IMG/VR virus record: IMGVR_UViG_3300004151_000006
Location: 186,001-250,000 of that record
Length of the DNA stretch: 64,000 nt
Direction: 5' to 3' (one strand)
The notes under the pieces were generated by a model. It was not told the origin of the DNA, ran no database searches, and was given only the letters and a program-made list of their open reading frames with translations. Shown here piece by piece: positions 3,056-56,028 of the stretch (within the stretch, counting starts at the first letter, position 1; each line of letters opens with the position of its first letter). The translations under genes were made by a program, and so were the position numbers.

Positions 3056-4669
3056 ATGGAATCATTCACGAGTCAGGATATCACAGATTTTGTTAAACTT
3101 ATTGTTGAAGCTGGTGGTGGGTATTATGTTGATGCTGATAATGTGATTCGAAGAGAGAAGACTAATGATATTTGGTGTATTGAAACAAATGATACTCCTC
3201 CGCGTAAAGTAAAATTGGTGATTTACAATCACAATCAAAAAGATTCAGATGTCATCATGGTCAATCCATTTATTGAAGGTTTGCAAACATCAAAAGAATT
3301 ACAGTGGTTTTATATCACTAAAAATCTTGTAGTGTCTGTGTATCTCAAATTGCTTTATATTAATATTATCAAAGAATGTTTGAAAGTCAAAGCTAATCAA
3401 GAACTTGATAGTAATATTGTGAAACTTATTTCACCCTATTTGGAAATGGTAGATGATAAGATGTATGCTGAAATTGAAACCATCACAGCTAAGATCCACA
3501 CATTCTGTGACATTTATTGGAATGTGAATAAGAAATCTAGTGAACTCAAAGTCAGTGTACTTTCTGAGAATTTTAGAAAATCTTTTGGTAAGAAGATCCG
3601 TCAGAAGACTTGGACATATCTCATTGAAGTGGCAAAAGCTATCTTTGGTACTGATGATCCATCTTCTGTTTATCGAATGAAATCAGATAATCATGGATGT
3701 GCTAAGTTTGAAGCATTCGCTCAAGTGTTCTTGATGGTATTTAAAGCTTATAGACCGTATTTTGTATTGACTCCTGATTTTAAAGCATTTGATTTTGAAG
3801 CTATGGAGAAGCATATCTCCATGATTCCACTTTATTATCATCGTGCTAAAAACCTTGTGTCTCCAGCTATTGTGGATCAAAAGAAAAAAGCTGTAACTCC
3901 AGCCAATCCTCCTTGGAAGCCAGTTCCAGTTATGGCTACCAATGTGGAATACATTCCACCGGCTGCACCAACAGTGGCGACTCCAGTCATTGGGTCTGCT
4001 CTCGGTACTCCGGTGACACCCACTCCAGTACCAGTACAACAAGCTACAATCCCGACAGCACAAGCCACCGTGCCGGCTATCCCTGTGGCAGTACAGCCGA
4101 TGGCTGCACCGACATATATGCAGCCACCTATCTCTGTGGGACATGCTGTCCAGGCTGCTATGATGGCACCCCAGATGATGAACAATATGTGGGGAGGGTA
4201 TCCCCAAAACCCTATGGTACAGCTGCCACCCATGCCCCAGGTGGCAGCTGTGGGCCAAATGGGTGCACCATACGGTAACATGCCCATGATGATGGGACAA
4301 CAGCAGTATCCCATGATGCAGCAGCCTGGAGCAATGCCCACTCTTGGTCAAGCTATGGGAACTGTACCACAGCAACCACAGATGTATCAGCAGCCCATGC
4401 CTGTAGGGTACCCCAATCAAATGGGATATCCCAATATGGGTATGCAGATGCAGCCAAATATGGGACTCATGGGTATGCCGCAACAGCAGCAAATGATGCC
4501 CATGCAGTATCAGGGTATGATGCCCCAACAGGGTATGTATCCTGGTCAATATCCTATGCAGCAGCAGATGATGCCTGCTAGTGATACCATGACGATGTCA
4601 TCAATTGGTGTGCCGATCCGTATGAGTAATAATCCTGATAATAATCGTGCAGCATATAAACGTGGATAA
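3056..4669 (+). CDS. phiKZ gp70-like core protein with a long Pro/Gln/Met/Gly low-complexity C-terminus
   Basis: N-terminus (DFVKLIVEAGGGYYVDADNVI...KLVIYN...NPFIEG) resembles the gp70 family and synteny fits; the last ~230 aa are PQMG-rich. Confidence 0.55.
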   Translation: MESFTSQDITDFVKLIVEAGGGYYVDADNVIRREKTNDIWCIETNDTPPRKVKLVIYNHNQKDSDVIMVNPFIEGLQTSKELQWFYITKNLVVSVYLKLLYINIIKECLKVKANQELDSNIVKLISPYLEMVDDKMYAEIETITAKIHTFCDIYWNVNKKSSELKVSVLSENFRKSFGKKIRQKTWTYLIEVAKAIFGTDDPSSVYRMKSDNHGCAKFEAFAQVFLMVFKAYRPYFVLTPDFKAFDFEAMEKHISMIPLYYHRAKNLVSPAIVDQKKKAVTPANPPWKPVPVMATNVEYIPPAAPTVATPVIGSALGTPVTPTPVPVQQATIPTAQATVPAIPVAVQPMAAPTYMQPPISVGHAVQAAMMAPQMMNNMWGGYPQNPMVQLPPMPQVAAVGQMGAPYGNMPMMMGQQQYPMMQQPGAMPTLGQAMGTVPQQPQMYQQPMPVGYPNQMGYPNMGMQMQPNMGLMGMPQQQQMMPMQYQGMMPQQGMYPGQYPMQQQMMPASDTMTMSSIGVPIRMSNNPDNNRAAYKRG

Positions 4670-42331: not shown

Positions 42332-42427
42332 CCCTTACAAATGCTACTCATTTTTTTATAAATATATATCATAAAATTGAATGTGGATTAAAATCTGATT
42401 AACACTTTAACAATGAGGTAAAATGTT

Positions 42428-42652
42428 TTGGCTGGAAATTTATGTTCATTAATTGCTGTGACTGGTAAAGGCCGTGGTCCCCGTCAACCTGAAGTCAGGC
42501 CCGACACTGGACGTGAAGCTGTCATCTCCTTACATCAGCGTAAGGGGATGGTTACCTGCAAAGTGTGTAAGACACGATTTCCTCGATTTAAGATGAAGCA
42601 TGGGTTATGCCCATTCTGTCATCACGACCGGAAACAGAAGATTGAGGATTGA
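42428..42652 (+). CDS. Small Zn-ribbon protein, 74 aa
   Basis: CKVC...CPFC; GAGGT RBS, TTG start. Confidence 0.55.
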   Translation: MAGNLCSLIAVTGKGRGPRQPEVRPDTGREAVISLHQRKGMVTCKVCKTRFPRFKMKHGLCPFCHHDRKQKIED

Positions 42653-42657
42653 TTTTA

Positions 42658-42682
42658 GGGACCTGGGCAATGCCCAGGTCCC
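42658..42682. terminator. 12-bp stem hairpin
   Basis: GGGACCTGGGCA-A-TGCCCAGGTCCC. Confidence 0.6.
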
Positions 42683-42815
42683 GTATCAAATATAGTAGAT
42701 ATCTTTTTATTAACAATGATTATGCTGATCATCTTTTTTCAAATATATATAATCAAAGTGAAGTCAATAGGATATCCCACTGACTAATCGTCTTAACATC
42801 CGAAAGGAGAGCATC

Positions 42816-43016
42816 ATGGCTACTACCTTTACGGGACTCCTTGATCGTGAACCGATCGTCGGGGTCCTCCCCGAATTTTGGTGGCACGATGAGACCCGTC
42901 CTGGTTTTACCCTGGTGCTCGACCAGGATGTCCAGGACCAAATCAATACTGGAAACTGTGACTGGACAGCTATGGCTGACAGTCTTGGTGCCCAGGCTAT
43001 AGGGGCTGCCGCATGA
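42816..43016 (+). CDS. Hypothetical acidic protein, 66 aa (GC-rich codons)
   Basis: AAAGGAG RBS; coupled to the downstream HTH gene. Confidence 0.65.
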   Translation: MATTFTGLLDREPIVGVLPEFWWHDETRPGFTLVLDQDVQDQINTGNCDWTAMADSLGAQAIGAAA

Positions 43017-43324
43017 ACACCTCCATTATCCCAATGAGGAGACCGCTCTCTTCTCCTCCCATGCAACTGAAAGAAGCTGCCAAATCCAGCATGAATCGAC
43101 TCATGCTGGCTGAGATGACTTGTCGAAAGGCGGGTCATCGGATCCGGGTCCTACGAATAGCTTATCGCATGACCCGTGAGGACATGGCCCAGCGGGTGGG
43201 TCTTACCCCCAGTCAGATTGAGGAACTGGAAAGCTGCAAGGGGAATACTTGCAGAAATCTCCTCAAACAAGTGGCTTCCTTCTTCAAAGTGCCGGTCGAC
43301 GAGCTGGCACTTGACTGTCAGTAG
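43013..43324 (+). CDS. XRE/Cro-family helix-turn-helix regulator
   Basis: GHRIRVLRIAYRMTREDMAQRVGLTPSQIEELES...LKQVASFFKVPVDEL. Confidence 0.8.
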   Translation: MNTSIIPMRRPLSSPPMQLKEAAKSSMNRLMLAEMTCRKAGHRIRVLRIAYRMTREDMAQRVGLTPSQIEELESCKGNTCRNLLKQVASFFKVPVDELALDCQ

Positions 43325-43329
43325 GGTCA

Positions 43330-43365
43330 ATGGGATGGGTACCCCATTTGGGGTACCCATCCCAT
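43330..43365. terminator. 17-bp stem hairpin
   Basis: ATGGGATGGGTACCCCA-TT-TGGGGTACCCATCCCAT. Confidence 0.65.
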
Positions 43366-43439
43366 GTCACATGGTACTCATATTTTTTGATATATACATT
43401 ATAGTTCTGATATCAATACAAAATTCCACGGAGGAACAC

Positions 43440-43772
43440 ATGCTTAGTGAAGAACAAAAACTCCCCATCTTCAACTATGGAAAGATCGTGGTATGGCGAG
43501 TATCATACTTCCGAAAGGATGATACTACGCTTCATGATAACCTTTTTACCAACCATGATTTCAGTCTGCAGTTTCTTGGTGGGGGTTGGCCACTCACTGA
43601 AAATGAAGAATTCCAGTTTATTCAAGAACTTCTCGGCACCAAACGGTGGTATCCTCAAATCAAATCTTATATCGAAATGGTCCGGATCCAAAAGATCCAA
43701 CTCGACTTCGGTCGGGATGAAAATGTCAGATTCAAGGAAACCGTCACCATCATCGGCAACTGGACCCATTGA
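43440..43772 (+). CDS. Hypothetical protein, 110 aa
   Basis: GGAGG RBS before ATG 43440. Confidence 0.65.
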   Translation: MLSEEQKLPIFNYGKIVVWRVSYFRKDDTTLHDNLFTNHDFSLQFLGGGWPLTENEEFQFIQELLGTKRWYPQIKSYIEMVRIQKIQLDFGRDENVRFKETVTIIGNWTH

Positions 43773-43784
43773 TCGCATGCTAGT

Positions 43785-43810
43785 GGAGCAGCCCCATGTG
43801 GGGCTGCTCC
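43785..43810. terminator. 12-bp stem hairpin
   Basis: GGAGCAGCCCCA-TG-TGGGGCTGCTCC. Confidence 0.6.
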
Positions 43811-47862: not shown

Positions 47863-48242
47863 GGAGATGTTGAATACACAGAAGATTCAGCATTATCTCT
47901 CTGTCCCACCAAATAGTGATATTTGGATGGTATCTCCCCTAATTGCTGGGATACCCTTAGAGCCATTCTACCTAAGCGGAGTGTGAAAACACACACGTGT
48001 CGAAAGACAGGTTGGAAAAGTGAATGGATTGGGTAATCAGCAGCGAAGTCCCTAAAGACACTATGTCCATGGGATGTGTTCAACGACTGACCGCTTATCA
48101 CGGTGTACACACTGAGTGGTGTGGAAATGGGGAGCACCCCAAGTGGGTGAAGGTATAGTCTCATCTGCATTGAAAGATGCAGCAGTACAGTATATTTATA
48201 CTGTACGGGATTGTAGGTAACGCTACAGTCCGAAGACACATG
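47863..48242 (+). ncRNA. Self-splicing group I intron without ORF, 380 nt
   Basis: P AATTGCTGGG 47941, Q AATCAGCAG 48035, R GTTCAACGACT 48078, S AAGGTATAGTCT 48150; P3 CTCCCC/GGGGAG; P1 gives U47862-G47903 wobble; terminal G48242; splicing restores HDD-SKRISF in frame. Confidence 0.85.
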
Positions 48243-49391
48243 AGCAAACGCATAAGTTTTATATCTACCCAGATGAGTCATGTGGTGGCTACTAAAGACC
48301 TTGATCTTTGTAGAGTCCGTACTGGATATGAAAATATGATAGGACAACAATGTAGTAGTACATATGTTGGTATAGCAAAACAAGATGGTGTAATCACACA
48401 AGTAGATAGAGCTAATAATATCCTTAGAGTGGATTATAAAGATGGAACAGCTGATGTGTATAGTTTTGGTGAACAATACACCAATATCTCTGGTATGTAT
48501 ATTACACAACATCTCATTTGTGTCGTAGACCAGGGTGATAAAGTAAAGAAAGGTGATATACTCTGTTTCAATGATCAATATTTTAAAATGGATAAATATA
48601 CTAAACAATTAAATGCTGGACATGGTGTGTTAGCTAAAGTGGTACTTATGGAGACCGATAATACACTTGAAGACAGTAATGCTATCACTAAACAGTTTGG
48701 TAAAAGACTTACCATCACACCCACACATACTCGAGATATTGTATTGACTAAAAATAGTGTGATACATCAATATCTTACAATAGGTACACATGTAAAGAAT
48801 ACTGATACTATATTGGTGTTTGAAGATGAAGATCTTGGCGATATGGGATCACTCACTGGTGGGGATATCTCAACTTTAGAGATGTTAAAGACACTTAATA
48901 AAAATATGCCTAAAGCTAAACATAGTGGTGAAATAGTCAAGATAGAGGCTTTTTATGCCTGTCCTATATCTGAGATGGGTGAATCTGTAGCTAAACTTGT
49001 CACTGAATGTAATAAATCTAAATTAACTAAATATAAGTTCTCTCGTGGTACCAATATGGAATATGATTATATTCCGCCCACAGTACTTCCTGAAAGGACT
49101 AAATATAAAGGTAATGAATTTGATAAGGATACGGTAGTCATTCAGTTTTATATCAAAGAGGATATAGCACATGGTGTTGGTGATAAAGCTGTACTTGGAA
49201 ATCAATTAAAAAGTACCTCTAATGAAGTATTAGAAGAACCTATTCTTTCTGAATCTGGTATAGAGATAGATGTCGTATTTGGTACTGCTAGTGTAGCAAA
49301 TCGTGTTGTACTTGGATGCTTTTTATCTGGTAGTGCATCTAGAGTATTGGAAGAATTACAATATCAAGCTGTAGATATGTATTTTAATTAA
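48243..49391 (+). CDS. Virion RNA polymerase beta subunit, exon 2 (spliced product about 1704 aa)
   Basis: KRISFISTQMSH, GVGDKAVLGNQLK and DVVFGTASVANRVV beta motifs. Confidence 0.85.
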   Translation, partial: SKRISFISTQMSHVVATKDLDLCRVRTGYENMIGQQCSSTYVGIAKQDGVITQVDRANNILRVDYKDGTADVYSFGEQYTNISGMYITQHLICVVDQGDKVKKGDILCFNDQYFKMDKYTKQLNAGHGVLAKVVLMETDNTLEDSNAITKQFGKRLTITPTHTRDIVLTKNSVIHQYLTIGTHVKNTDTILVFEDEDLGDMGSLTGGDISTLEMLKTLNKNMPKAKHSGEIVKIEAFYACPISEMGESVAKLVTECNKSKLTKYKFSRGTNMEYDYIPPTVLPERTKYKGNEFDKDTVVIQFYIKEDIAHGVGDKAVLGNQLKSTSNEVLEEPILSESGIEIDVVFGTASVANRVVLGCFLSGSASRVLEELQYQAVDMYFN

Positions 49392-49401
49392 CTACTGATA
49401 G

Positions 49402-49437
49402 AGATGGATGTAGGGGCATATGCCCCTACATCCATCT
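49402..49437. terminator. Perfect 36-bp palindrome
   Basis: AGATGGATGTAGGGGCAT|ATGCCCCTACATCCATCT. Confidence 0.65.
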
Positions 49438-49523
49438 GCATTGAATATATATATTATTCACATGATACAATGTATTTATTTTTAAGGATCACTATCAATG
49501 ATTTGAAATGGAGGTAAATCCAT

Positions 49524-50360
49524 ATGGGTAATGATTCAACAAATCATACAAAATTGATTCATAGTATATTAAATAATTTAGAAGATACTGCCTATGGTCA
49601 GAAAAGAGAAATGATGCATGAGTTATATAACACCGATATCTATTGCCCATCAATTACTCCAATGAAAATACCATCATGTAAATCAGGAGTATTATCTATA
49701 ATGAAAACATTTCCACTAGATATGAATCTTGGTAAAACTCTATATTTCAATGAATTGGAGATACGTAAATATGAAGCTTTTGATAGTGATGTAAAGATAC
49801 CAGAATCTATCACTGTAGGAAGCATTGCTTTATATTTATCTGAGAGTAAACAATGTAGTGTTATGGAACTTTACAGTACAATGGATCCTTATCAGAAATA
49901 TAAATTAGCTATAGTGTTTAAAGATAATATGTTCATTGAACCATTGAAGATCTTTTTATTTCAAAAGTTATACAGTTATATGGGAGGGAGTCCATTATAT
50001 CAGGATATACACAGTGTGTTTGGTAATGACAGTATCAATCTACGTGCGGATCCACGACATATATATGTAAAATGTAATAAAGATACAATAAAACCACATG
50101 AGGTAACTAAATATATTTATTATGATAAATCAAATACATCATCAGAAACATTGAGTGGACGTTGGGATGATACATCCAGAGTAGAGTATTTAAATTATAA
50201 ACATGAATTGTATAAAGATGATACCTGCATACTACTTGAGATCTTACATATTGAAGATATAACTATATTGCATAAACATATGCATACATCTAGACAATAC
50301 ACAAAGTTAGATAGCTGGTTAGGTGTAAATCTCAATATACGGAGTATCTATGGGATATAG
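49524..50360 (+). CDS. Hypothetical protein, paralog of the next gene
   Basis: Shares EIRKYE...IP...V.ELY...YK..I and C-terminal W.GV.L...I.GI with 50350-51363. Confidence 0.7.
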   Translation: MGNDSTNHTKLIHSILNNLEDTAYGQKREMMHELYNTDIYCPSITPMKIPSCKSGVLSIMKTFPLDMNLGKTLYFNELEIRKYEAFDSDVKIPESITVGSIALYLSESKQCSVMELYSTMDPYQKYKLAIVFKDNMFIEPLKIFLFQKLYSYMGGSPLYQDIHSVFGNDSINLRADPRHIYVKCNKDTIKPHEVTKYIYYDKSNTSSETLSGRWDDTSRVEYLNYKHELYKDDTCILLEILHIEDITILHKHMHTSRQYTKLDSWLGVNLNIRSIYGI

Positions 50361-51363
50361 TGGATGTGAGTTATTAAAACCCATATCAAGTACAAATCAA
50401 GATTTGATATATCGACCATATTTAATAAAAATACAAGATATAAACAAAGAAATAAAAGAGATAGAAGAAATATTAGAATGTAATAGAAGAATATATTACG
50501 ATCGGTGTAATGATGGTTTTGATAATAAAAGTCTTGTAGAAAATATTGATTTATTAGTTAAAAAATTAGAAAAGAAAAGAATTGAATGGTGTGAATATGA
50601 CAAGAAAATCAAGGAGGTAAAATTAATGAGTGTGACAAATCACATGAAAGATGAGATCGCATATCCATTTGGTATTAATATCAACAATGCTATTCTCATA
50701 GATCCCATTGAAATCAGGAAATATGAATGCTTAGATACATGGTTGGCTATCCCAGATCAATTTGAAATCAAATGTATTGGTATGTATAGTACTAAAAATG
50801 GAAATAGTCGTGTTGTTGAATTGTATAATGGTACAGATATACTTAACAGTGAATACAAGATGAGTATTTTGACTACAGATGCAAAAGCTAATGCTATTAG
50901 AGAAATTATATTCTTTGAAAGAGCAGAGATCGGTAATGTGGTTACAGATATTGAACAATATCGTACATTACGAAAGATGTGTGGTGATGGATATATCACT
51001 TTAAATTGGGAAAATGATGAAGTGCCAATGGAACGTATTTATACTCGTATATTGGATAATCAAGATCTGAGTAAATCATCAGAAAAGACCATCTCTAATC
51101 ATAAACTATTTTACAATAAAGTCATTGATCCAAAGAATAATAAAGAATATGCACATGAATGGAGTTTCCAATGTCCGATTGATAGTGTACCATATATCAC
51201 AATGTTGTATGAAGATAAAGATACTCAAGTTGGTGAATTGGTAGAATTTGATTGTTTCAATTATAGAGAAGGATATCGCGGTAGCGATTTTAATGCAAGG
51301 CATGTAATTATTTGGGTGGGGGTAAAACTTAGTTTGACAAATATTAAAGGTATCTATGTTTAA
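50350..51363 (+). CDS. Hypothetical protein with N-terminal coiled coil, paralog of the previous gene
   Basis: Shared motifs as above. Confidence 0.7.
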   Translation: MGYSGCELLKPISSTNQDLIYRPYLIKIQDINKEIKEIEEILECNRRIYYDRCNDGFDNKSLVENIDLLVKKLEKKRIEWCEYDKKIKEVKLMSVTNHMKDEIAYPFGININNAILIDPIEIRKYECLDTWLAIPDQFEIKCIGMYSTKNGNSRVVELYNGTDILNSEYKMSILTTDAKANAIREIIFFERAEIGNVVTDIEQYRTLRKMCGDGYITLNWENDEVPMERIYTRILDNQDLSKSSEKTISNHKLFYNKVIDPKNNKEYAHEWSFQCPIDSVPYITMLYEDKDTQVGELVEFDCFNYREGYRGSDFNARHVIIWVGVKLSLTNIKGIYV

Positions 51364-51369
51364 GGAGGG

Positions 51370-52350
51370 ATGATGAAAAAATATAGTTGGATAACTTTAT
51401 TTATTTTATCAATAAGTCTCATTGCTAATATCACTTATGCTAAAGGTAGTAGTAGTAGTAGTAGTAGTTCTAGTGGAAGATCATCGTCATCATTTTCTTC
51501 TAGTAGTAAATCTAGCAGTAGCTTCAGTAGTAGTAGTAAACCAAGTACACCCTCATATACTTCATCATCTAGTAAACCCACTGGTATTACATCATCTAAT
51601 TCAAGTAATACACCTAGCAGTACTATACCCAAGACACCAATAATTTATAGTAATACAACCAAGTCAACCACCATCTCTAGTGGTAGTAATAATACAATCA
51701 AACCAAATAATCCACCTAAACTCAATTATATTCAGAATGCAAATACACCCACTAAAAAGACTGAAGATGTGAAAAGTTATCGTACGGAGAAAGCTCGATA
51801 TACTTTTAATACTTCAACTCCTCCAGTGACTACAAGATCAACTATCCCAACGAGTAATCGTAGCTGGTCTAGTTATGATGAATACAAATCTAATCAACGT
51901 AGGTATTATACTGAGCACAATTGGAATCCTCCTGTTTATATTTACAACACCTATCCTTCATTTGGTGGATTCTCTAATCCATGGTTATTTTTCATGTTAG
52001 GTAATATGTCATCGAATTTCTTTTATCATAGACAAGATGATCCTGGTGTAAAGACATTCTTAGCTGAAGCAGAAAGATTATCTACTGATAATAAAGAATT
52101 AAAAGATCAATTAGCTAAAGTAAAAGCTGATATGGAAAAATTGAAACAAGATGGTACTACTATAGAAAAAGAATATTTTCCCAAAGATCAGGATCCTGAT
52201 ATAGCCACTGAATTGGAAATCGATGATGATGATGAAAGTAGTGATTTTGGTACTATCTTAGTATCTATCTTAATCATCGGTATGTTTATTTGGATAGGTG
52301 TTGTAGCTATACGTATTTTACGTAGACATAAACAAAAGAGAGATTGGTAA
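51370..52350 (+). CDS. Exported/membrane protein with signal peptide, Ser-rich linker, coiled coil and C-terminal TM helix
   Basis: N-terminal hydrophobic leader ending YA, poly-Ser, FFYHRQDDPG...AERLSTDNKELK, C-terminal TM followed by RRHK. Confidence 0.75.
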   Translation: MMKKYSWITLFILSISLIANITYAKGSSSSSSSSSGRSSSSFSSSSKSSSSFSSSSKPSTPSYTSSSSKPTGITSSNSSNTPSSTIPKTPIIYSNTTKSTTISSGSNNTIKPNNPPKLNYIQNANTPTKKTEDVKSYRTEKARYTFNTSTPPVTTRSTIPTSNRSWSSYDEYKSNQRRYYTEHNWNPPVYIYNTYPSFGGFSNPWLFFMLGNMSSNFFYHRQDDPGVKTFLAEAERLSTDNKELKDQLAKVKADMEKLKQDGTTIEKEYFPKDQDPDIATELEIDDDDESSDFGTILVSILIIGMFIWIGVVAIRILRRHKQKRDW

Positions 52351-52475
52351 TGTATGAATGGATCGACCATTTATTGTTTGATAATCCAAGGCTTACTATC
52401 TATACATTACTTGGTATAATTGTTGGGATGATTATAAGTCTTATATACACTGTAATTCGCAGTAGATTCGAATAA
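52350..52475 (+). CDS. 41-aa single-TM microprotein (not in the ORF track)
   Basis: TAATG coupling; MYEWIDHLLFDNPRLTIYTLLGIIVGMIISLIYTVIRSRFE. Confidence 0.5.
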   Translation: MYEWIDHLLFDNPRLTIYTLLGIIVGMIISLIYTVIRSRFE

Positions 52476-52495
52476 ATCCTAAATACGGAGGTAGC

Positions 52496-53380
52496 ATGTT
52501 TTCACCAATTGCGGTTTTTGCAAGTATGATAGTGTTACTTGTTATAAGTCTTGGTGTGGGATGGCTTGTTAATGACATTACACAACCCTCTAACAGAAGG
52601 AGAAAGACCATGGGCCTGTTCGGAAAGCTGTTTGGCGTCAAAGTCGATCGCATCAAGGATGCCATCCTCAAGAGTGATGTCCTTGGTAACCCCAATGACA
52701 TTTCTGAAGCACAGCTGCGGGAATACCAGGAAAAGTGGGAAGAAATCACCACTCGTCTTGGCACTGCCACTCAGCGTCTGGCCAAAGAACAGCGGGATGT
52801 GACTGAGCTTGAAGAAGCTATTCGCATCCACGTCATCGGTGCCAAGAAGATGCAGGAAAAGCGCGATGCTGCCGGCACCGAAGAAGAAAAGAATCGATTC
52901 CAGGTCAAGATCGACCAGATGGTCGGCGACATCAAGTCCATGCAGGCCAAAATGGACATCGAAAAGGCTGAAGCCACTACTGCTTCCAGCCATGTCAATC
53001 TGTTGCAGGAAGCGGCAGATAAATGCATGGAACGCATCAAGTCCCATCGCAAGGCTATCCAGGATGCCAAAGATAACCTTGAGTCTGCCAAGCTCAAGCG
53101 TGACATGGCCAAGGATCGTGAAGAAGATGCCAAGCTGGTCTCTGGCCTGGTAGATCCCAATGCCATCGGCATCAACAGTGCCCTGGATGCCATCAACAAA
53201 GTGGCCCAGGATCTGGAACAAGAAGCTACCATCGCCAACCAGCGGGCTGACATGCTCCAGTCTGATGTGGCCAAGGATTCTCCGGATGCTGACATCCGTC
53301 AGGTCTTGGAAGAAGCCAAGAGCACCACTCCCAAGGGTACTCCTGAGTCCACTGACGACTTCTTGTCCAAGTTCAAATAG
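52496..53380 (+). CDS. PspA/IM30-like coiled-coil protein; two in-frame starts (52496 TM-bearing, 52610 soluble)
   Basis: MGLFGKLFG amphipathic start and long heptad helices; GGAGG before 52496 and GAAGGAG before 52610. Confidence 0.65.
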   Translation: MFSPIAVFASMIVLLVISLGVGWLVNDITQPSNRRRKTMGLFGKLFGVKVDRIKDAILKSDVLGNPNDISEAQLREYQEKWEEITTRLGTATQRLAKEQRDVTELEEAIRIHVIGAKKMQEKRDAAGTEEEKNRFQVKIDQMVGDIKSMQAKMDIEKAEATTASSHVNLLQEAADKCMERIKSHRKAIQDAKDNLESAKLKRDMAKDREEDAKLVSGLVDPNAIGINSALDAINKVAQDLEQEATIANQRADMLQSDVAKDSPDADIRQVLEEAKSTTPKGTPESTDDFLSKFK

Positions 53381-53390
53381 CACATGCTAA

Positions 53391-53424
53391 GGATAGGGTG
53401 CACCCACATGGGTGCACTCTATCC
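53391..53424. terminator. 16-bp stem hairpin with one G-T pair
   Basis: GGATAGGGTGCACCCA-CA-TGGGTGCACTCTATCC. Confidence 0.65.
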
Positions 53425-53444
53425 ACCTTGTTATCCATTTATTT

Positions 53445-53460
53445 TTTAAATATATATTAT
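53445..53460 (+). promoter_or_regulatory. Putative early promoter
   Basis: TTTAAATATATATTAT. Confidence 0.55.
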
Positions 53461-53501
53461 TTATTTGGTGTTTATGTTAAAATCTATAAGGAGGATGTCA
53501 T

Positions 53502-54320
53502 ATGGCCAAACATTATAGGGCAGCATTGGTCCGTGGTGATATGGAACTTACCAGCAATCAAATCAAACAAAATAAAGCTCTTGTCAAAATGTTTAATATG
53601 ATGCGTGAAGAAGAATTCTATATGAATTTAGTGAACATATTATTTATGTATGCTACACAAAAGAAAGAATTAGAAGTCTTACCTGAAGATATTGTATATA
53701 TCACCATGGATGGAGATATCAAATTTAAGATGATATTGACTCAAGAAAACATTGATGTATTTAAACAAGCTGTTGTGAGAAGTGTCATAGATGGTGAACA
53801 CACCGTAGTGGAATCACACAGTATTTCAGATGTATTTTTAATGACTAAAAAGAACTTTGAAAAGTTTCATTATCGGGATACTCCGGGAAAGATCTTCGTG
53901 TTAGTCAGTGGTTTCAGCAAAGCAAATGCTCTTAAAATCCTGGAGCAATATGATAGCATGTTGGATAAATCCGACTGGGAGGATATTACTCATGAAAAAT
54001 ATACAGAATTAAAATCGGGTATTGAAGCTATAGCTGAAGAGTATTTTTACAATAATGGTGTCCCCTACAACGATGACTCTATAGAACTCATGCTTGCAGT
54101 ATCTATCATTTTGGATTCATTTACCATAATTGATTATGATTATTTAAATTGGTATAAATCCATTGGTAAAAAAGATGCTATGAATTTTCTTGAATTGTTG
54201 GAGGATGTCATTGAAGAAGACAAGTTGAACTATTATCAAGATCTTGATACATTGAAAGAAAAGATCAAAGTACTCAAAGAAGAGTTGTTGGCACATTACA
54301 CCCCTAAACGTGTAAAATAA
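53502..54320 (+). CDS. Hypothetical protein, 272 aa
   Basis: AGGAGG RBS. Confidence 0.75.
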   Translation: MAKHYRAALVRGDMELTSNQIKQNKALVKMFNMMREEEFYMNLVNILFMYATQKKELEVLPEDIVYITMDGDIKFKMILTQENIDVFKQAVVRSVIDGEHTVVESHSISDVFLMTKKNFEKFHYRDTPGKIFVLVSGFSKANALKILEQYDSMLDKSDWEDITHEKYTELKSGIEAIAEEYFYNNGVPYNDDSIELMLAVSIILDSFTIIDYDYLNWYKSIGKKDAMNFLELLEDVIEEDKLNYYQDLDTLKEKIKVLKEELLAHYTPKRVK

Positions 54321-54332
54321 AGGAGAGACTAT

Positions 54333-54599
54333 ATGTCCATTATTCTGGAATTGATACGGGCGCACCCATTTCTTACATATCTAAACATAGGGATCTTAAT
54401 TATTGCGTTTTCAATTTTGATCAGGTCTAATATCACCAAAACCAACATATTGAAAAAAATAAATGATCATATCTGCGATCGCATAATTTATGAAAATGTC
54501 AGTCCGATCTCCGTAGGGATTTCACTTTTCGTGTGTTTTCTTATTTGGCCACTGTTCATATTCTTATTGTTTTTCCATTTTACACCCAAAACCAAATAG
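54333..54599 (+). CDS. Small 2-TM membrane protein, 88 aa
   Basis: Two hydrophobic helices, ending in ICFLIWPLF-like segment (CFLIWPLFIFLLFF); AAGGAG RBS. Confidence 0.65.
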   Translation: MSIILELIRAHPFLTYLNIGILIIAFSILIRSNITKTNILKKINDHICDRIIYENVSPISVGISLFVCFLIWPLFIFLLFFHFTPKTK

Positions 54600-55320: not shown

Positions 55321-56028
55321 ATGTATATCCAAATCACTGATCGTTGTAATATGTCATGTGTACATTGTGGTCATAATTGTACTACTGTTGGTAATGACAT
55401 GGATGTTAAAACTTTTGCACAGTCCTGTAAATTGGCAGTTAAATTTCACTATGATATTTGTATTGGTGGAGGAGAACCAACACTCCATAAAGATTTTGAA
55501 AGATTTCTTGAAATCAGCTTGGATCATTCTGATAATGTCAATTTGGTGACTAATGGAACCAACACCAAAATGTCCTTATTTTTAGCAGAATTGGCTGCTG
55601 ACGGTATTATTCATTGCACACTATCTCTTGATAAATATCATGATCGTTCTATGGTTAGCCAAGATGTGATCAATGCATTTCAAAAGGACACTACCAACAA
55701 AAAAGATCATCGACATATACAGGATGTCTCTGAACCAGGACACCGGCTAGTATATGCTGGACGAACAATACTCTCCAAAACAAAAGGTCTCATTGATCAG
55801 GAAATCAGAGATGATTGTTTTGGTCCTGGATTCCATGTGAAACCAGATGGTCGTTTATATCACTGTGCTTGTCAAATGGTCTCATACAACACAGTGTTCA
55901 ACCCCACTTTTCATCGAAACATTTATCGCACACGGTATACCTGTTCTGAACGGGATCCATGGCGCAAGTATTTGCGTATGACCAATGATGATGAAGATTG
56001 GGAAAAGATGGTTTGGAGGGGATATTAA
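55321..56028 (+). CDS. Radical SAM protein with a short Cys-containing (Twitch-like) C-terminus
   Basis: ITDRCNMSCVHC (CxxxCxxC), GGGEPTLH, LVTNG, SLDKYH, C...HVKPDGRLYHC. Confidence 0.85.
   Translation: MYIQITDRCNMSCVHCGHNCTTVGNDMDVKTFAQSCKLAVKFHYDICIGGGEPTLHKDFERFLEISLDHSDNVNLVTNGTNTKMSLFLAELAADGIIHCTLSLDKYHDRSMVSQDVINAFQKDTTNKKDHRHIQDVSEPGHRLVYAGRTILSKTKGLIDQEIRDDCFGPGFHVKPDGRLYHCACQMVSYNTVFNPTFHRNIYRTRYTCSERDPWRKYLRMTNDDEDWEKMVWRGY

What the first reader, a model, noticed from the sequence alone, without database searches (positions are those of the whole stretch)
52496..53380. PspA/ESCRT-III-like gene with two strong in-frame starts giving membrane-anchored and soluble isoforms
Seen: ATG 52496 (GGAGG) adds a 38-aa leader with one TM helix in AT-rich codons; ATG 52610 (GAAGGAG) starts a classic MGLFGKLFG PspA-type helix in GC-rich codons. 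Knowledge: PspA/IM30 proteins polymerise and remodel or seal membranes. Inference: co-assembly of anchored and soluble subunits could protect the infected cell's membrane or shape the lipid early-infection vesicle described for nucleus-forming phages.
Basis: partly seen in the sequence, partly recalled or inferred. Interest (0 to 1): 0.6.

Follow-up and report, generated by a model that had tools for sequence, protein, structure and literature searches.

The report
Phage PspA-like gene with two starts
A freshwater jumbo phage carries a distant relative of the bacterial membrane-repair protein PspA; the gene has gained a short membrane-anchor extension but kept its original start signal, so it probably makes both an anchored and a free form of the same membrane-binding protein.

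Summary
ORF 52496-53380 (+, 294 aa) has ATG 52496 behind GGAGG, a 38-codon leader with one transmembrane helix, and an in-frame ATG 52610 behind GAAGGAG with a 7-nt spacer. At that point GC jumps from about 0.3 to 0.52.

The body is a real but divergent PspA/IM30 relative. It misses Pfam PF04012, but its family profile aligns end to end with PF04012-positive PspA proteins (hhalign 97.8%, E 1e-12). The top PDB matches by sequence and by fold are Vipp1/PspA. Bacterial relatives sit in yjfJ-type operons with DUF2491 and DUF350.

About 150 relatives are roughly 255 aa and begin at the internal Met. Only three family members have a TM extension (this phage, a 63%-identical phage contig, and contig L110). 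All three keep GGAG 5-7 nt before the internal ATG, although the residues it encodes differ. Synonymous codon usage switches from bulk-gene type to capsid-gene type exactly at the internal ATG.

Two isoforms, a minor anchored one and a major soluble one, are therefore likely. They are not shown: no RNA or protein data exist.

The link to nucleus-forming phages and their early-infection vesicle is unsupported. Phage-encoded PspA was described in 2026, so this is a new variant of a known kind.

The parts
49448..49456 (+). Candidate phage promoter motif TATATATTA, just after a hairpin that follows the RNAP beta-fragment gene. Probable start of the operon that ends with the PspA-like gene.
   Evidence: The motif occurs 28 times on the + strand and 4 times on the - strand genome-wide, and mostly lies 40-80 nt before an SD+ATG. 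Its function is inferred.
51370..52350 (+). Conserved partner gene (326 aa). Layout: signal peptide, S/T-rich stretch, Y/W-rich conserved block, coiled coil, acidic stretch, C-terminal TM with a basic tail.
   Evidence: It lies upstream of the PspA-like gene in L002 (53% identity) and in L110 (E 5e-28). The same holds in metagenome loci L115, L116, L117, L122 and L123. It has no Pfam family.
52350..52475 (+). 41-aa ORF with one TM helix. Its ATG overlaps the partner's stop codon (TAATG). It is absent in L002.
   Evidence: It is an ORF only; there is no evidence of expression.
52487..52498 (+). Upstream start: GGAGG, a 4-nt spacer, then ATG 52496. This start gives the long isoform (294 aa, 32.8 kDa).
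   Evidence: In L002 the matching ATG has GGAG 11 nt upstream. In L110 it overlaps the partner's stop codon.
52496..52609 (+). 38-codon leader with one TM helix (about residues 5-25). The N-terminus is uncharged and RRRK follows the helix, so the predicted topology is N-out/C-in. Its codon usage is that of the phage's bulk genes.
   Evidence: The leader is 17% identical to the L002 leader, yet both are open, start with ATG and are hydrophobic (KD 2.5).
52596..52612 (+). Internal start: GAAGGAG, a 7-nt spacer, then ATG 52610. This start gives the short isoform (256 aa, 28.6 kDa) and corresponds to the ancestral start of the family.
   Evidence: GGAG at the same spacing in L002 encodes GG instead of RR. 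In L110 GGAG sits 5 nt upstream. Leaderless relatives have their SD at this position. The chance rate is 1.6%.
52616..52687 (+). Helix alpha0, the N-terminal amphipathic membrane-binding helix (short-isoform residues 3-26).
   Evidence: AF2 model. The hydrophobic moment is 0.48, against 0.49-0.50 for E. coli PspA and YjfJ.
52691..53140 (+). Long helical hairpin alpha1 (residues 28-87) and alpha2/3 (residues 91-177), the core of the PspA/ESCRT-III fold.
   Evidence: pLDDT is 90-97. Vipp1 entries 7o3x/7o3w give Z 11.1, rmsd 2.8 over 154 residues. The nine best Foldseek rows are all Vipp1 entries of the PspA/Vipp1 family.
53183..53377 (+). C-terminal helices alpha4 (residues 192-218), alpha5 (227-237) and alpha6 (248-255), modelled with low confidence.
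   Evidence: They align collinearly with the PspA C-terminus in hhalign and in the PDB profile match.
53391..53424 (+). Strong hairpin (15-bp stem) that ends the operon. L002 has a hairpin of different sequence at the same place.
53451..53459 (+). Next copy of the promoter-like motif, serving the downstream gene (53502..54320). The surrounding AT-rich block is conserved in L002.

Best explanation
The gene encodes a divergent PspA/IM30-superfamily protein of the yjfJ type.

In bacteria this family is a soluble protein of about 255 aa. It starts with an amphipathic helix and is encoded next to DUF2491 and DUF350 membrane-module genes.

In this phage lineage those two genes are gone. The reading frame has been extended upstream by 38 codons that encode one N-out/C-in transmembrane helix. 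The ancestral Shine-Dalgarno sequence and ATG are kept inside the longer ORF.

Ribosomes therefore most likely start at two places. The upstream ATG would give a minor 32.8-kDa form anchored in the inner membrane. The internal ATG would give a major 28.6-kDa soluble form.

By analogy with PspA, Vipp1 and LiaH, the soluble form would bind the cytoplasmic face of the membrane through helix alpha0 and polymerise. The anchored form would act as a built-in membrane nucleator. The likely outcome is stabilisation or remodelling of the host inner membrane during infection.

Shown here: the sequence anatomy, superfamily homology, the rarity and conservation of the TM extension, the conserved internal SD, and the codon-usage switch.

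Inferred: use of both starts, the ratio of the two forms, co-assembly and the physiological role.
For: Family:
- hhalign of the 70-sequence family profile against 20 PF04012-positive PspA proteins gives probability 97.8%, E 1.1e-12, over 231 columns from residue 1. The reversed-template control gives 10%.
- The best PDB profile hits are Vipp1/PspA with the DPE motif aligned.
- The nine best Foldseek matches are all Vipp1 structures of the PspA/Vipp1 family. VIA-align gives Z 11.1 to Vipp1, including alpha0.
- ESM Atlas features score 0.97 to clusters named PspA/IM30.
- Relatives lie beside DUF2491 and DUF350 genes, as E. coli yjfJ-yjfK-yjfL do (PMC11237479).

Internal start:
- 141 of 149 cluster representatives are 235-270 aa and align from their own residue 1 to the internal Met.
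- GGAG lies 7 nt before it in both phages although the encoded residues differ (RR versus GG). In L110 it lies 5 nt before the Met.
- Background for such sites is 1.6% of internal ATGs, against 41% of gene starts.
- Synonymous sites between the two phages are near saturation (pS 0.59-0.86), so the motif is maintained rather than inherited passively.

Codon usage:
- The log-ratio score (capsid-like versus bulk genes) is -1.25 for the leader and +0.85 for the body in the window. In L002 it is -0.21 and +0.94. No body window is as low as the leader.

Leader is coding:
- It is open, ATG-initiated and hydrophobic in three contigs. Leaderless relatives have stop codons 1-16 codons upstream of the Met.
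Against: - There is no expression evidence. Only DNA runs hold the phage, and they show no variants.
- The comparison rests on three TM-extended sequences, two of which are close kin.
- Low-GC, non-optimal codons are common in N-terminal and TM-coding segments for other reasons, so the codon switch is not proof of unequal translation.
- The GC-rich style could partly reflect origin. One GC-rich gene of the phage is a MYG1-type cellular enzyme.
- The first codons after the internal ATG are GC-rich (GC3 0.74), which is unusual for a strong start.
- Pfam PF04012 is not matched.
- Long helical hairpins give similar Z scores to unrelated proteins.
Confidence: 0.58

Rival explanations
1. Only the upstream ATG is used. 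The protein is simply a TM-anchored PspA-like protein, and the internal SD+ATG is a relic of the fusion or is kept for another reason (for example the basic or glycine linker residues).
For: - The long ORF and its TM helix are conserved.
- Ribosomes elongating from upstream could occlude the internal site.
- The Arg codons AGA/AGG that suit a positive-inside linker in an AT-rich genome create GGAG by themselves.
Against: - The motif persists at fixed spacing while the residues change (RR, GG, NG) and synonymous sites are saturated.
- The upstream SD spacing is poor in L002 (11 nt) and absent in L110.
- The codon-usage switch at the internal ATG appears in both phages.
Confidence: 0.22
2. Only the internal ATG is used. 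The 'leader' is an untranslated 5' region that happens to be open, and the product is an ordinary soluble PspA-like protein.
For: - All other relatives are leaderless.
- The leader has bulk, non-optimised codon usage and only 17% identity between the two phages.
Against: - An open frame of 38-55 codons, starting with ATG and encoding a TM-grade hydrophobic helix (KD 2.5-2.9), occurs in all three contigs. Leaderless relatives show stops within 1-16 codons.
- GGAGG precedes ATG 52496.
Confidence: 0.1
3. The protein shapes or maintains a lipid compartment of a nucleus-forming phage (the early-infection vesicle).
For: - The phage has a phiKZ-type multisubunit RNAP fragment (phrog_3148, E 1e-91) and a phiKZ-type head protein family.
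- PspA-type proteins remodel membranes.
- The mechanism of vesicle formation is an open question (PMC12908238).
Against: - No chimallin homologue was found by search or pairwise comparison. There was no usable Atlas hit and no tubulin/PhuZ.
- The vesicle forms at injection, from injected components (PMC12908238).
- The same family occurs in ordinary bacterial yjfJ-type operons.
Confidence: 0.05
4. The long form is an i-spanin-like or other lysis or structural coiled-coil protein (N-terminal TM plus a long helical domain) rather than a PspA-type membrane protector.
For: The layout, an N-terminal TM followed by long coiled-coil helices, superficially resembles Rz-type i-spanins. Generic helical hairpins score as high as Vipp1 in VIA-align.
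Against: - Full-length profile homology to PspA.
- Leaderless cytoplasmic relatives.
- The charge distribution places the body in the cytoplasm.
- No lipoprotein o-spanin ORF is embedded or adjacent.
Confidence: 0.03

Closest known systems
E. coli YjfJ (PspA-family protein of the yjfIJKLMC operon) and the yjfJ-type PspA group described in PMC11237479
   Same: - A soluble protein of about 230-260 aa with an N-terminal amphipathic helix and the PspA helix order.
- Relatives of the phage protein are encoded beside DUF2491 (YjfK-like) and DUF350 (YjfL-like) genes.
   Different: - Direct sequence similarity to YjfJ is insignificant, and the family fails PF04012.
- The gene order differs: partner/DUF2491, then DUF350, then the PspA-like gene.
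- The phage copy has lost DUF2491 and DUF350 and gained a TM leader.
PspA / Vipp1 (IM30) / LiaH, bacterial ESCRT-III-like membrane remodellers (PDB 6zvr, 7o3w, 8qbw)
   Same: Full-length profile homology, the same helix order alpha0 to alpha6, the DPE-type motif at the start of alpha1, and best fold matches.
   Different: - Only 8-19% identity.
- According to PMC11237479, more than 98% of PspA homologues have only the PspA domain. Anchoring is normally done by separate proteins (PspB/C, LiaI), not by a fused TM helix.
- Polymerisation was not tested here.
Phage-encoded PspA of huge phages (Yuan & Chen, bioRxiv 10.64898/2026.10.24.761521)
   Same: A PspA-type gene in a large phage genome next to membrane-protein genes. 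The preprint's proposed role is stabilising the host membrane during infection.
   Different: - Their genes were found by PF04012 or by structure clusters. Their IMG/VR screen needed PF04012 at E <= 1e-5, which this protein would not pass.
- They describe no TM fusion or dual start.
- The neighbours differ: here a conserved signal-peptide/TM partner of unknown family.
Mgm1/OPA1 long and short isoforms (PMC2753158)
   Same: A membrane-remodelling protein that exists as a TM-anchored long form and a soluble short form, which act together. This is the closest functional analogy for the proposed mechanism.
   Different: Those proteins are dynamin-family GTPases, and the short form arises by proteolysis rather than by a second start. 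There is no homology.
Phage lambda S107/S105 dual-start motif and bacterial internal-initiation genes (my own knowledge; for SctQ see bioRxiv 10.1101/648071)
   Same: Two in-frame starts in one phage or bacterial gene give two products with different behaviour.
   Different: The lambda S starts are two codons apart and change membrane topology. Here the starts lie 38 codons apart and add or omit a whole TM anchor.

Membership tests
PspA/IM30/Vipp1 (ESCRT-III superfamily) | Match to Pfam PF04012 above the gathering score | tested here: not met
   There was no PF04012 hit even at E <= 1 or E <= 10 in the genome. Only 2 of 70 family members hit it weakly.
PspA/IM30/Vipp1 (ESCRT-III superfamily) | Full-length sequence-profile homology to bona fide PspA proteins | tested here: met
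   - hhalign of family profile A2 against 20 PF04012-positive proteins: probability 97.8%, E 1.1e-12, 231 columns. The reversed control gave 10%.
- The top PDB profile hits are Vipp1/PspA at E 0.0085.
PspA/IM30/Vipp1 (ESCRT-III superfamily) | Helix order alpha0, alpha1-alpha2/3 hairpin, alpha4, alpha5(, alpha6) | tested here: met
   - The AF2 model (pLDDT 78.8) has helices 3-26, 28-87, 91-177, 192-218, 227-237 and 248-255.
- Foldseek ranks 1-9 are all Vipp1 entries of the PspA/Vipp1 family, and Vipp1 is top in VIA-align with Z 11.1.
- Caveat: unrelated long hairpins reach Z of about 10-11.
PspA/IM30/Vipp1 (ESCRT-III superfamily) | N-terminal amphipathic membrane-binding helix | tested here: met
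   The hydrophobic moment is 0.48 (window) and 0.43 (L002), against 0.49-0.50 for E. coli PspA and YjfJ. The 95th percentile of body segments is 0.50.
PspA/IM30/Vipp1 (ESCRT-III superfamily) | Self-assembly into rings or rods, and membrane binding or remodelling | not testable with these tools
   The homotrimer complex prediction returned no verdict. This needs biochemistry or cryo-EM.
yjfJ-type PSP module | Encoded with DUF2491 and/or DUF350 genes | tested here: not met
   The feature is met for relatives L017, L018, L022, L115-L117, L122 and L123. The phage genome itself has no DUF2491, and no DUF350 was seen at the locus.
Dual-start (internal initiation) genes | Two in-frame start codons, each with its own ribosome-binding site, conserved in relatives | tested here: met
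Dual-start (internal initiation) genes | Both products detected | not testable with these tools
   No RNA run holds the phage, and no proteomic or Ribo-seq data are available.
Chimalliviridae (nucleus-forming phages) | Chimallin (ChmA) homologue | tested here: inconclusive
   - phiKZ gp54 finds nothing in the genome.
- A GC-rich 624-aa ORF has the same length but only weak collinear BLASTP pieces (best E 0.04) and no usable Atlas hit.
- PhuZ/tubulin is absent, but PhuZ is not essential to the family (PMC11724907).
i-spanin (Rz type) | N-in/C-out TM helix with a periplasmic coiled coil, and an o-spanin partner | tested here: not met
   There is no charge before the helix and RRRK follows it, which predicts a cytoplasmic body. 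No lipoprotein ORF is embedded or adjacent. The body is homologous to PspA.

The most novel reading that the evidence does not exclude
The long and short isoforms form a self-contained membrane-remodelling machine. A few TM-anchored subunits nucleate a polymer of many soluble subunits, which replaces the cellular DUF350/DUF2491 partners. A phiKZ-like freshwater jumbo phage would use this machine to build or maintain an intracellular lipid compartment, or to seal the inner membrane around its own entry or assembly sites. That would be the first phage-encoded ESCRT-III-type system with a genetically set anchor-to-polymer ratio.
Probability: 0.07. Interest if true: 0.85.

Novelty: new variant of a known kind. 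Interest (0 to 1): 0.5.

Why it matters
PspA, Vipp1 and ESCRT-III polymers must be recruited to membranes. In known systems separate proteins do this (PspB/C, LiaI) or helix alpha0 does it alone.

A natural gene that encodes both a TM-anchored and a soluble copy of the same PspA-type subunit would be a compact, genetically tractable model. It could show how anchoring nucleates such polymers and how the ratio of the two forms is set by two ribosome-binding sites.

The finding also extends the newly reported phage-encoded PspA genes to a family that Pfam-based screens miss, and it links that family to the poorly understood yjfJ/DUF2491/DUF350 module.

The abrupt codon-usage switch at an internal start could serve as a general sequence-only signal for finding internal initiation sites in phage genomes.

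Tried and rejected
- Pfam, PHROGs and direct PDB sequence searches with the single protein gave nothing.
- tblastn against GenBank phages found no match for this protein, the head protein or the 624-aa ORF.
- hhalign against single sequences of E. coli PspA or YjfJ was uninformative. It worked only with a 20-sequence PspA profile.
- The search for related loci with the broad alignment failed for lack of conserved stretches. Scans of viral contigs with the close pair and with the partner alignment found nothing beyond the phage itself.
- The word search with the partner protein found only the window's own protein and the L002 copy.
- Sequencing runs: four freshwater DNA runs hold identical sequence, with no variants, no RNA and no transcript ends.
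- The homotrimer prediction gave no verdict and is not evidence either way.
- mRNA folding showed no conserved structure that hides or exposes either start.
- Rfam had no match in 49000-54500.
- The idea that the partner protein is a DUF2491 relative was rejected.
- The idea that the TM leader derives from a DUF350 gene could not be tested, because the leaders are too short for Pfam.
- 'GC island = recent horizontal transfer' was rejected as the sole explanation. Both phages keep the island although their synonymous sites are near saturation (pS 0.59), and the phage's head protein has the same style.
- The preprint's supplementary tables are not held, so I could not check whether this phage is in its list.

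Full report
**What is there**

The window is bases 186001-250000 of a complete 286,688-bp virus record with inverted terminal repeats and 35% GC. Four freshwater metagenome DNA runs hold it without any variant.

ORF 52496..53380 (+) encodes 294 aa.
- ATG 52496 follows GGAGG with a 4-nt spacer.
- ATG 52610, in frame, follows GAAGGAG with a 7-nt spacer.
- Residues 1-38 contain one hydrophobic helix (Kyte-Doolittle maximum 2.55). The N-terminus is uncharged and RRRK follows the helix, which by the positive-inside rule puts the rest of the protein in the cytoplasm.
- From the internal ATG onward, GC rises from about 0.3 to 0.52 and GC3 from 0.32 to 0.62.
- A 15-bp hairpin follows the stop codon.

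**What the protein is**

Single-sequence searches are blank: Pfam including PF04012, PHROGs, PDB and GenBank phages.

The word search found one relative, P0002, on a 12.8-kb Logan contig (L002). It is 63% identical in the body, is also 294 aa long, and lies in the same gene order.

The exhaustive HMMER search found 160 cluster representatives at E <= 1e-3. Of 149 examined, 141 are 235-270 aa, and they align from their own first residue to the internal Met.

Sources name them 'hypothetical' or give coiled-coil misnomers. Many come from Desulfomonilaceae MAGs.

Evidence that the family is PspA-like:
- A 70-sequence profile of the family puts Vipp1/PspA first in the PDB (E 0.0085), with the DPE motif at the start of helix alpha1 aligned.
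- I built a profile from 20 PF04012-positive proteins taken from Desulfobacterota genomes plus E. coli PspA and YjfJ. hhalign against it gives probability 97.8%, E 1.1e-12, over 231 columns from residue 1 to the C-terminus. The reversed template gives 10%.
- The AF2 model (pLDDT 78.8) has the PspA helix order.
- Foldseek ranks 1-9 are all Vipp1 structures of the PspA/Vipp1 family.
- VIA-align puts Vipp1 first (Z 11.1, rmsd 2.8, 154 residues including alpha0), although generic hairpins score nearly as high.
- ESM Atlas features point to clusters named PspA/IM30 (score 0.97).

Gene context agrees.
- Relatives lie directly after DUF2491 genes.
- In GC-rich bacterial contigs the order is [partner block + DUF2491], then DUF350 (four TM helices), then the PspA-like gene.
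- That is the content of the E. coli yjfJ-yjfK-yjfL group and of the yjfJ-type operon described in PMC11237479.

So the protein is a member of the PspA/IM30 superfamily, in a subfamily that Pfam does not reach.

**The two starts**

A TM extension is rare in the family. Among the 151 proteins only the window's protein, P0002 and P0008 (contig L110, two TM helices) have one.

The leader is coding.
- It is open, begins with ATG and is strongly hydrophobic in all three contigs.
- The window and L002 leaders are only 17% identical, against 63% for the body.
- Leaderless relatives have in-frame stops 1-16 codons upstream of the Met.

The internal start is kept.
- GGAG lies 7 nt before the ATG in the window and in L002, where it encodes Arg-Arg and Gly-Gly respectively. 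In L110 it lies 5 nt before the ATG, inside Asn-Gly-Val.
- Leaderless relatives carry their ordinary SD at the same place.
- In this phage only 1.6% of internal in-frame ATGs have such a motif, against 41% of crudely called starts.
- Synonymous sites between the two phages are near saturation (pS 0.59 in the body, 0.86 in the leader). The motif is therefore maintained, not merely inherited.
- The upstream start looks weaker: SD spacing is 4-5 nt in the window and 11 nt in L002, and in L110 there is only an overlap with the previous stop codon.

**Codon usage**

About 15 genes of the phage are GC-rich islands. They include the major head protein (phrog_3231) and a virion protein (phrog_3185).

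I scored synonymous codons as the log-ratio of usage in those genes to usage in 144 bulk genes.

| Segment | Window | L002 |
|---|---|---|
| Leader | -1.25 | -0.21 |
| Body | +0.85 | +0.94 |

- The median over the 200 longest ORFs is -1.06, and the partner gene scores -1.22.
- The body lies above the 95th percentile of those ORFs.
- No body window of the leader's size scores below 0.49 in the window, or below 0.38 in L002.

The simplest reading is that the body is translated much more often than the leader, which makes the internal start the main one. There are caveats. TM and N-terminal segments often use non-optimal codons. One GC-rich gene is a MYG1-type cellular enzyme, so origin may contribute to the composition.

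**Surroundings**

The upstream gene 51370..52350 has a signal peptide, an S/T-rich stretch, a Y/W-rich block, a coiled coil and a C-terminal TM helix. It is a conserved partner.
- It precedes the PspA-like gene in L002 and in L110 (E 5e-28).
- It also does so in five metagenome contigs, with DUF2491 or DUF350 genes in between in the leaderless cases.
- The phage genome has no DUF2491.

A motif TATATATTA occurs 28 times on the + strand and 4 times on the - strand genome-wide. It lies at 49448 and 53451, each after a hairpin. This suggests an operon running from 49448 to the terminator at 53391-53424, with the PspA-like gene last.

**Mechanism and rivals**

The best-supported picture has three parts.
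- A soluble PspA-type subunit is made in quantity from ATG 52610.
- A minor TM-anchored version is made from ATG 52496.
- The anchored version serves as a membrane nucleator in place of the lost cellular partners.

The likely role is the one proposed for other phage PspA genes, namely keeping the host inner membrane intact during a long infection (bioRxiv 10.64898/2026.10.24.761521). Use of both starts, co-assembly and the role are all inferences.

The rivals are:
- only the long form is made;
- only the short form is made;
- a role in the early-infection vesicle;
- a spanin-like protein.

The vesicle idea lacks support. No chimallin or PhuZ could be detected, and that vesicle forms at injection (PMC12908238).

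**Novelty**

Phage-encoded PspA was reported in October 2026 for PF04012-detectable genes, with no mention of TM fusions or dual starts. Across cellular life, more than 98% of PspA homologues are single-domain (PMC11237479).

This gene is therefore a new variant of a known kind in three respects: it is a Pfam-invisible yjfJ-type PspA in a jumbo phage, it has a fused anchor, and it retains an internal start.

A functional parallel is the pair of long and short Mgm1/OPA1 isoforms (PMC2753158).

Noticed in passing
Whole genome G000; in the window 3683-4549, 42401-43800 and 52500-53400: About 15 sharply bounded GC-rich islands (GC 0.45-0.64 in a 35% GC genome). They cover the major head protein, a virion protein, a MYG1-type exonuclease (PF03690, E 2e-66) and several unknown ORFs. 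The difference lies largely at synonymous sites. It may mark highly expressed genes, but this is unexplained.
   Followed up: partly
window 7304, 19914, 37831, 49448, 53451, 60284 (+ strand): The motif TATATATTA is strongly strand-biased genome-wide (28 on + against 4 on -). It mostly lies 40-80 nt before an SD+ATG, and twice it sits directly after a hairpin. It is a candidate promoter for the phage's own RNA polymerase. The 15-mer around it is enriched (13 matches against 3 expected).
   Followed up: partly
window 51370-52350: A conserved partner protein of unknown family: signal peptide, long Ser/Thr-rich low-complexity stretch, Tyr/Trp-rich block, coiled coil, C-terminal TM helix. It travels with this PspA-like family in phage-like and bacterial contigs. 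In bacteria it is fused to DUF2491, and in L117 it is split into two ORFs.
   Followed up: partly
window 52350-52475: A 41-aa ORF with one TM helix whose ATG overlaps the partner's stop codon (TAATG). It is absent from L002. In L110 the two-TM leader of the PspA-like gene starts with the same TAATG overlap, so this small ORF may be the detached first helix of such a leader.
   Followed up: no
window 49524-50360 and 50350-51363; L002 525-1496; L111 80-1024: Two overlapping tandem genes look like diverged paralogues. They share a YE(A/C)(F/L)D..IP motif with single genes in the related contigs. No family match was found.
   Followed up: no
G000 173414-175288 (locus L015): A GC-rich 624-aa ORF preceded by the promoter-like motif. 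It is nearly the same length as phiKZ chimallin gp54 (626 aa) but shows only weak collinear BLASTP pieces (best E 0.04). Whether it is a very distant shell protein is open.
   Followed up: partly
window 48177-49391 and 55321-56028: A C-terminal fragment of a phiKZ-type multisubunit RNA polymerase beta subunit (phrog_3148, E 1e-91), and a radical-SAM protein (phrog_13987, E 7e-10) that is also present in L002.
   Followed up: no
Loci L040, L052, L065, L067, L081 (one Desulfomonilaceae-type MAG) and others: The bacterial branch of this PspA-like family is multi-copy in Desulfomonilaceae genomes, with at least five loci in one MAG. In a sample of 151 genomes of that phylum, canonical PF04012 genes passed E <= 1e-10 in only 19.
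   Followed up: no
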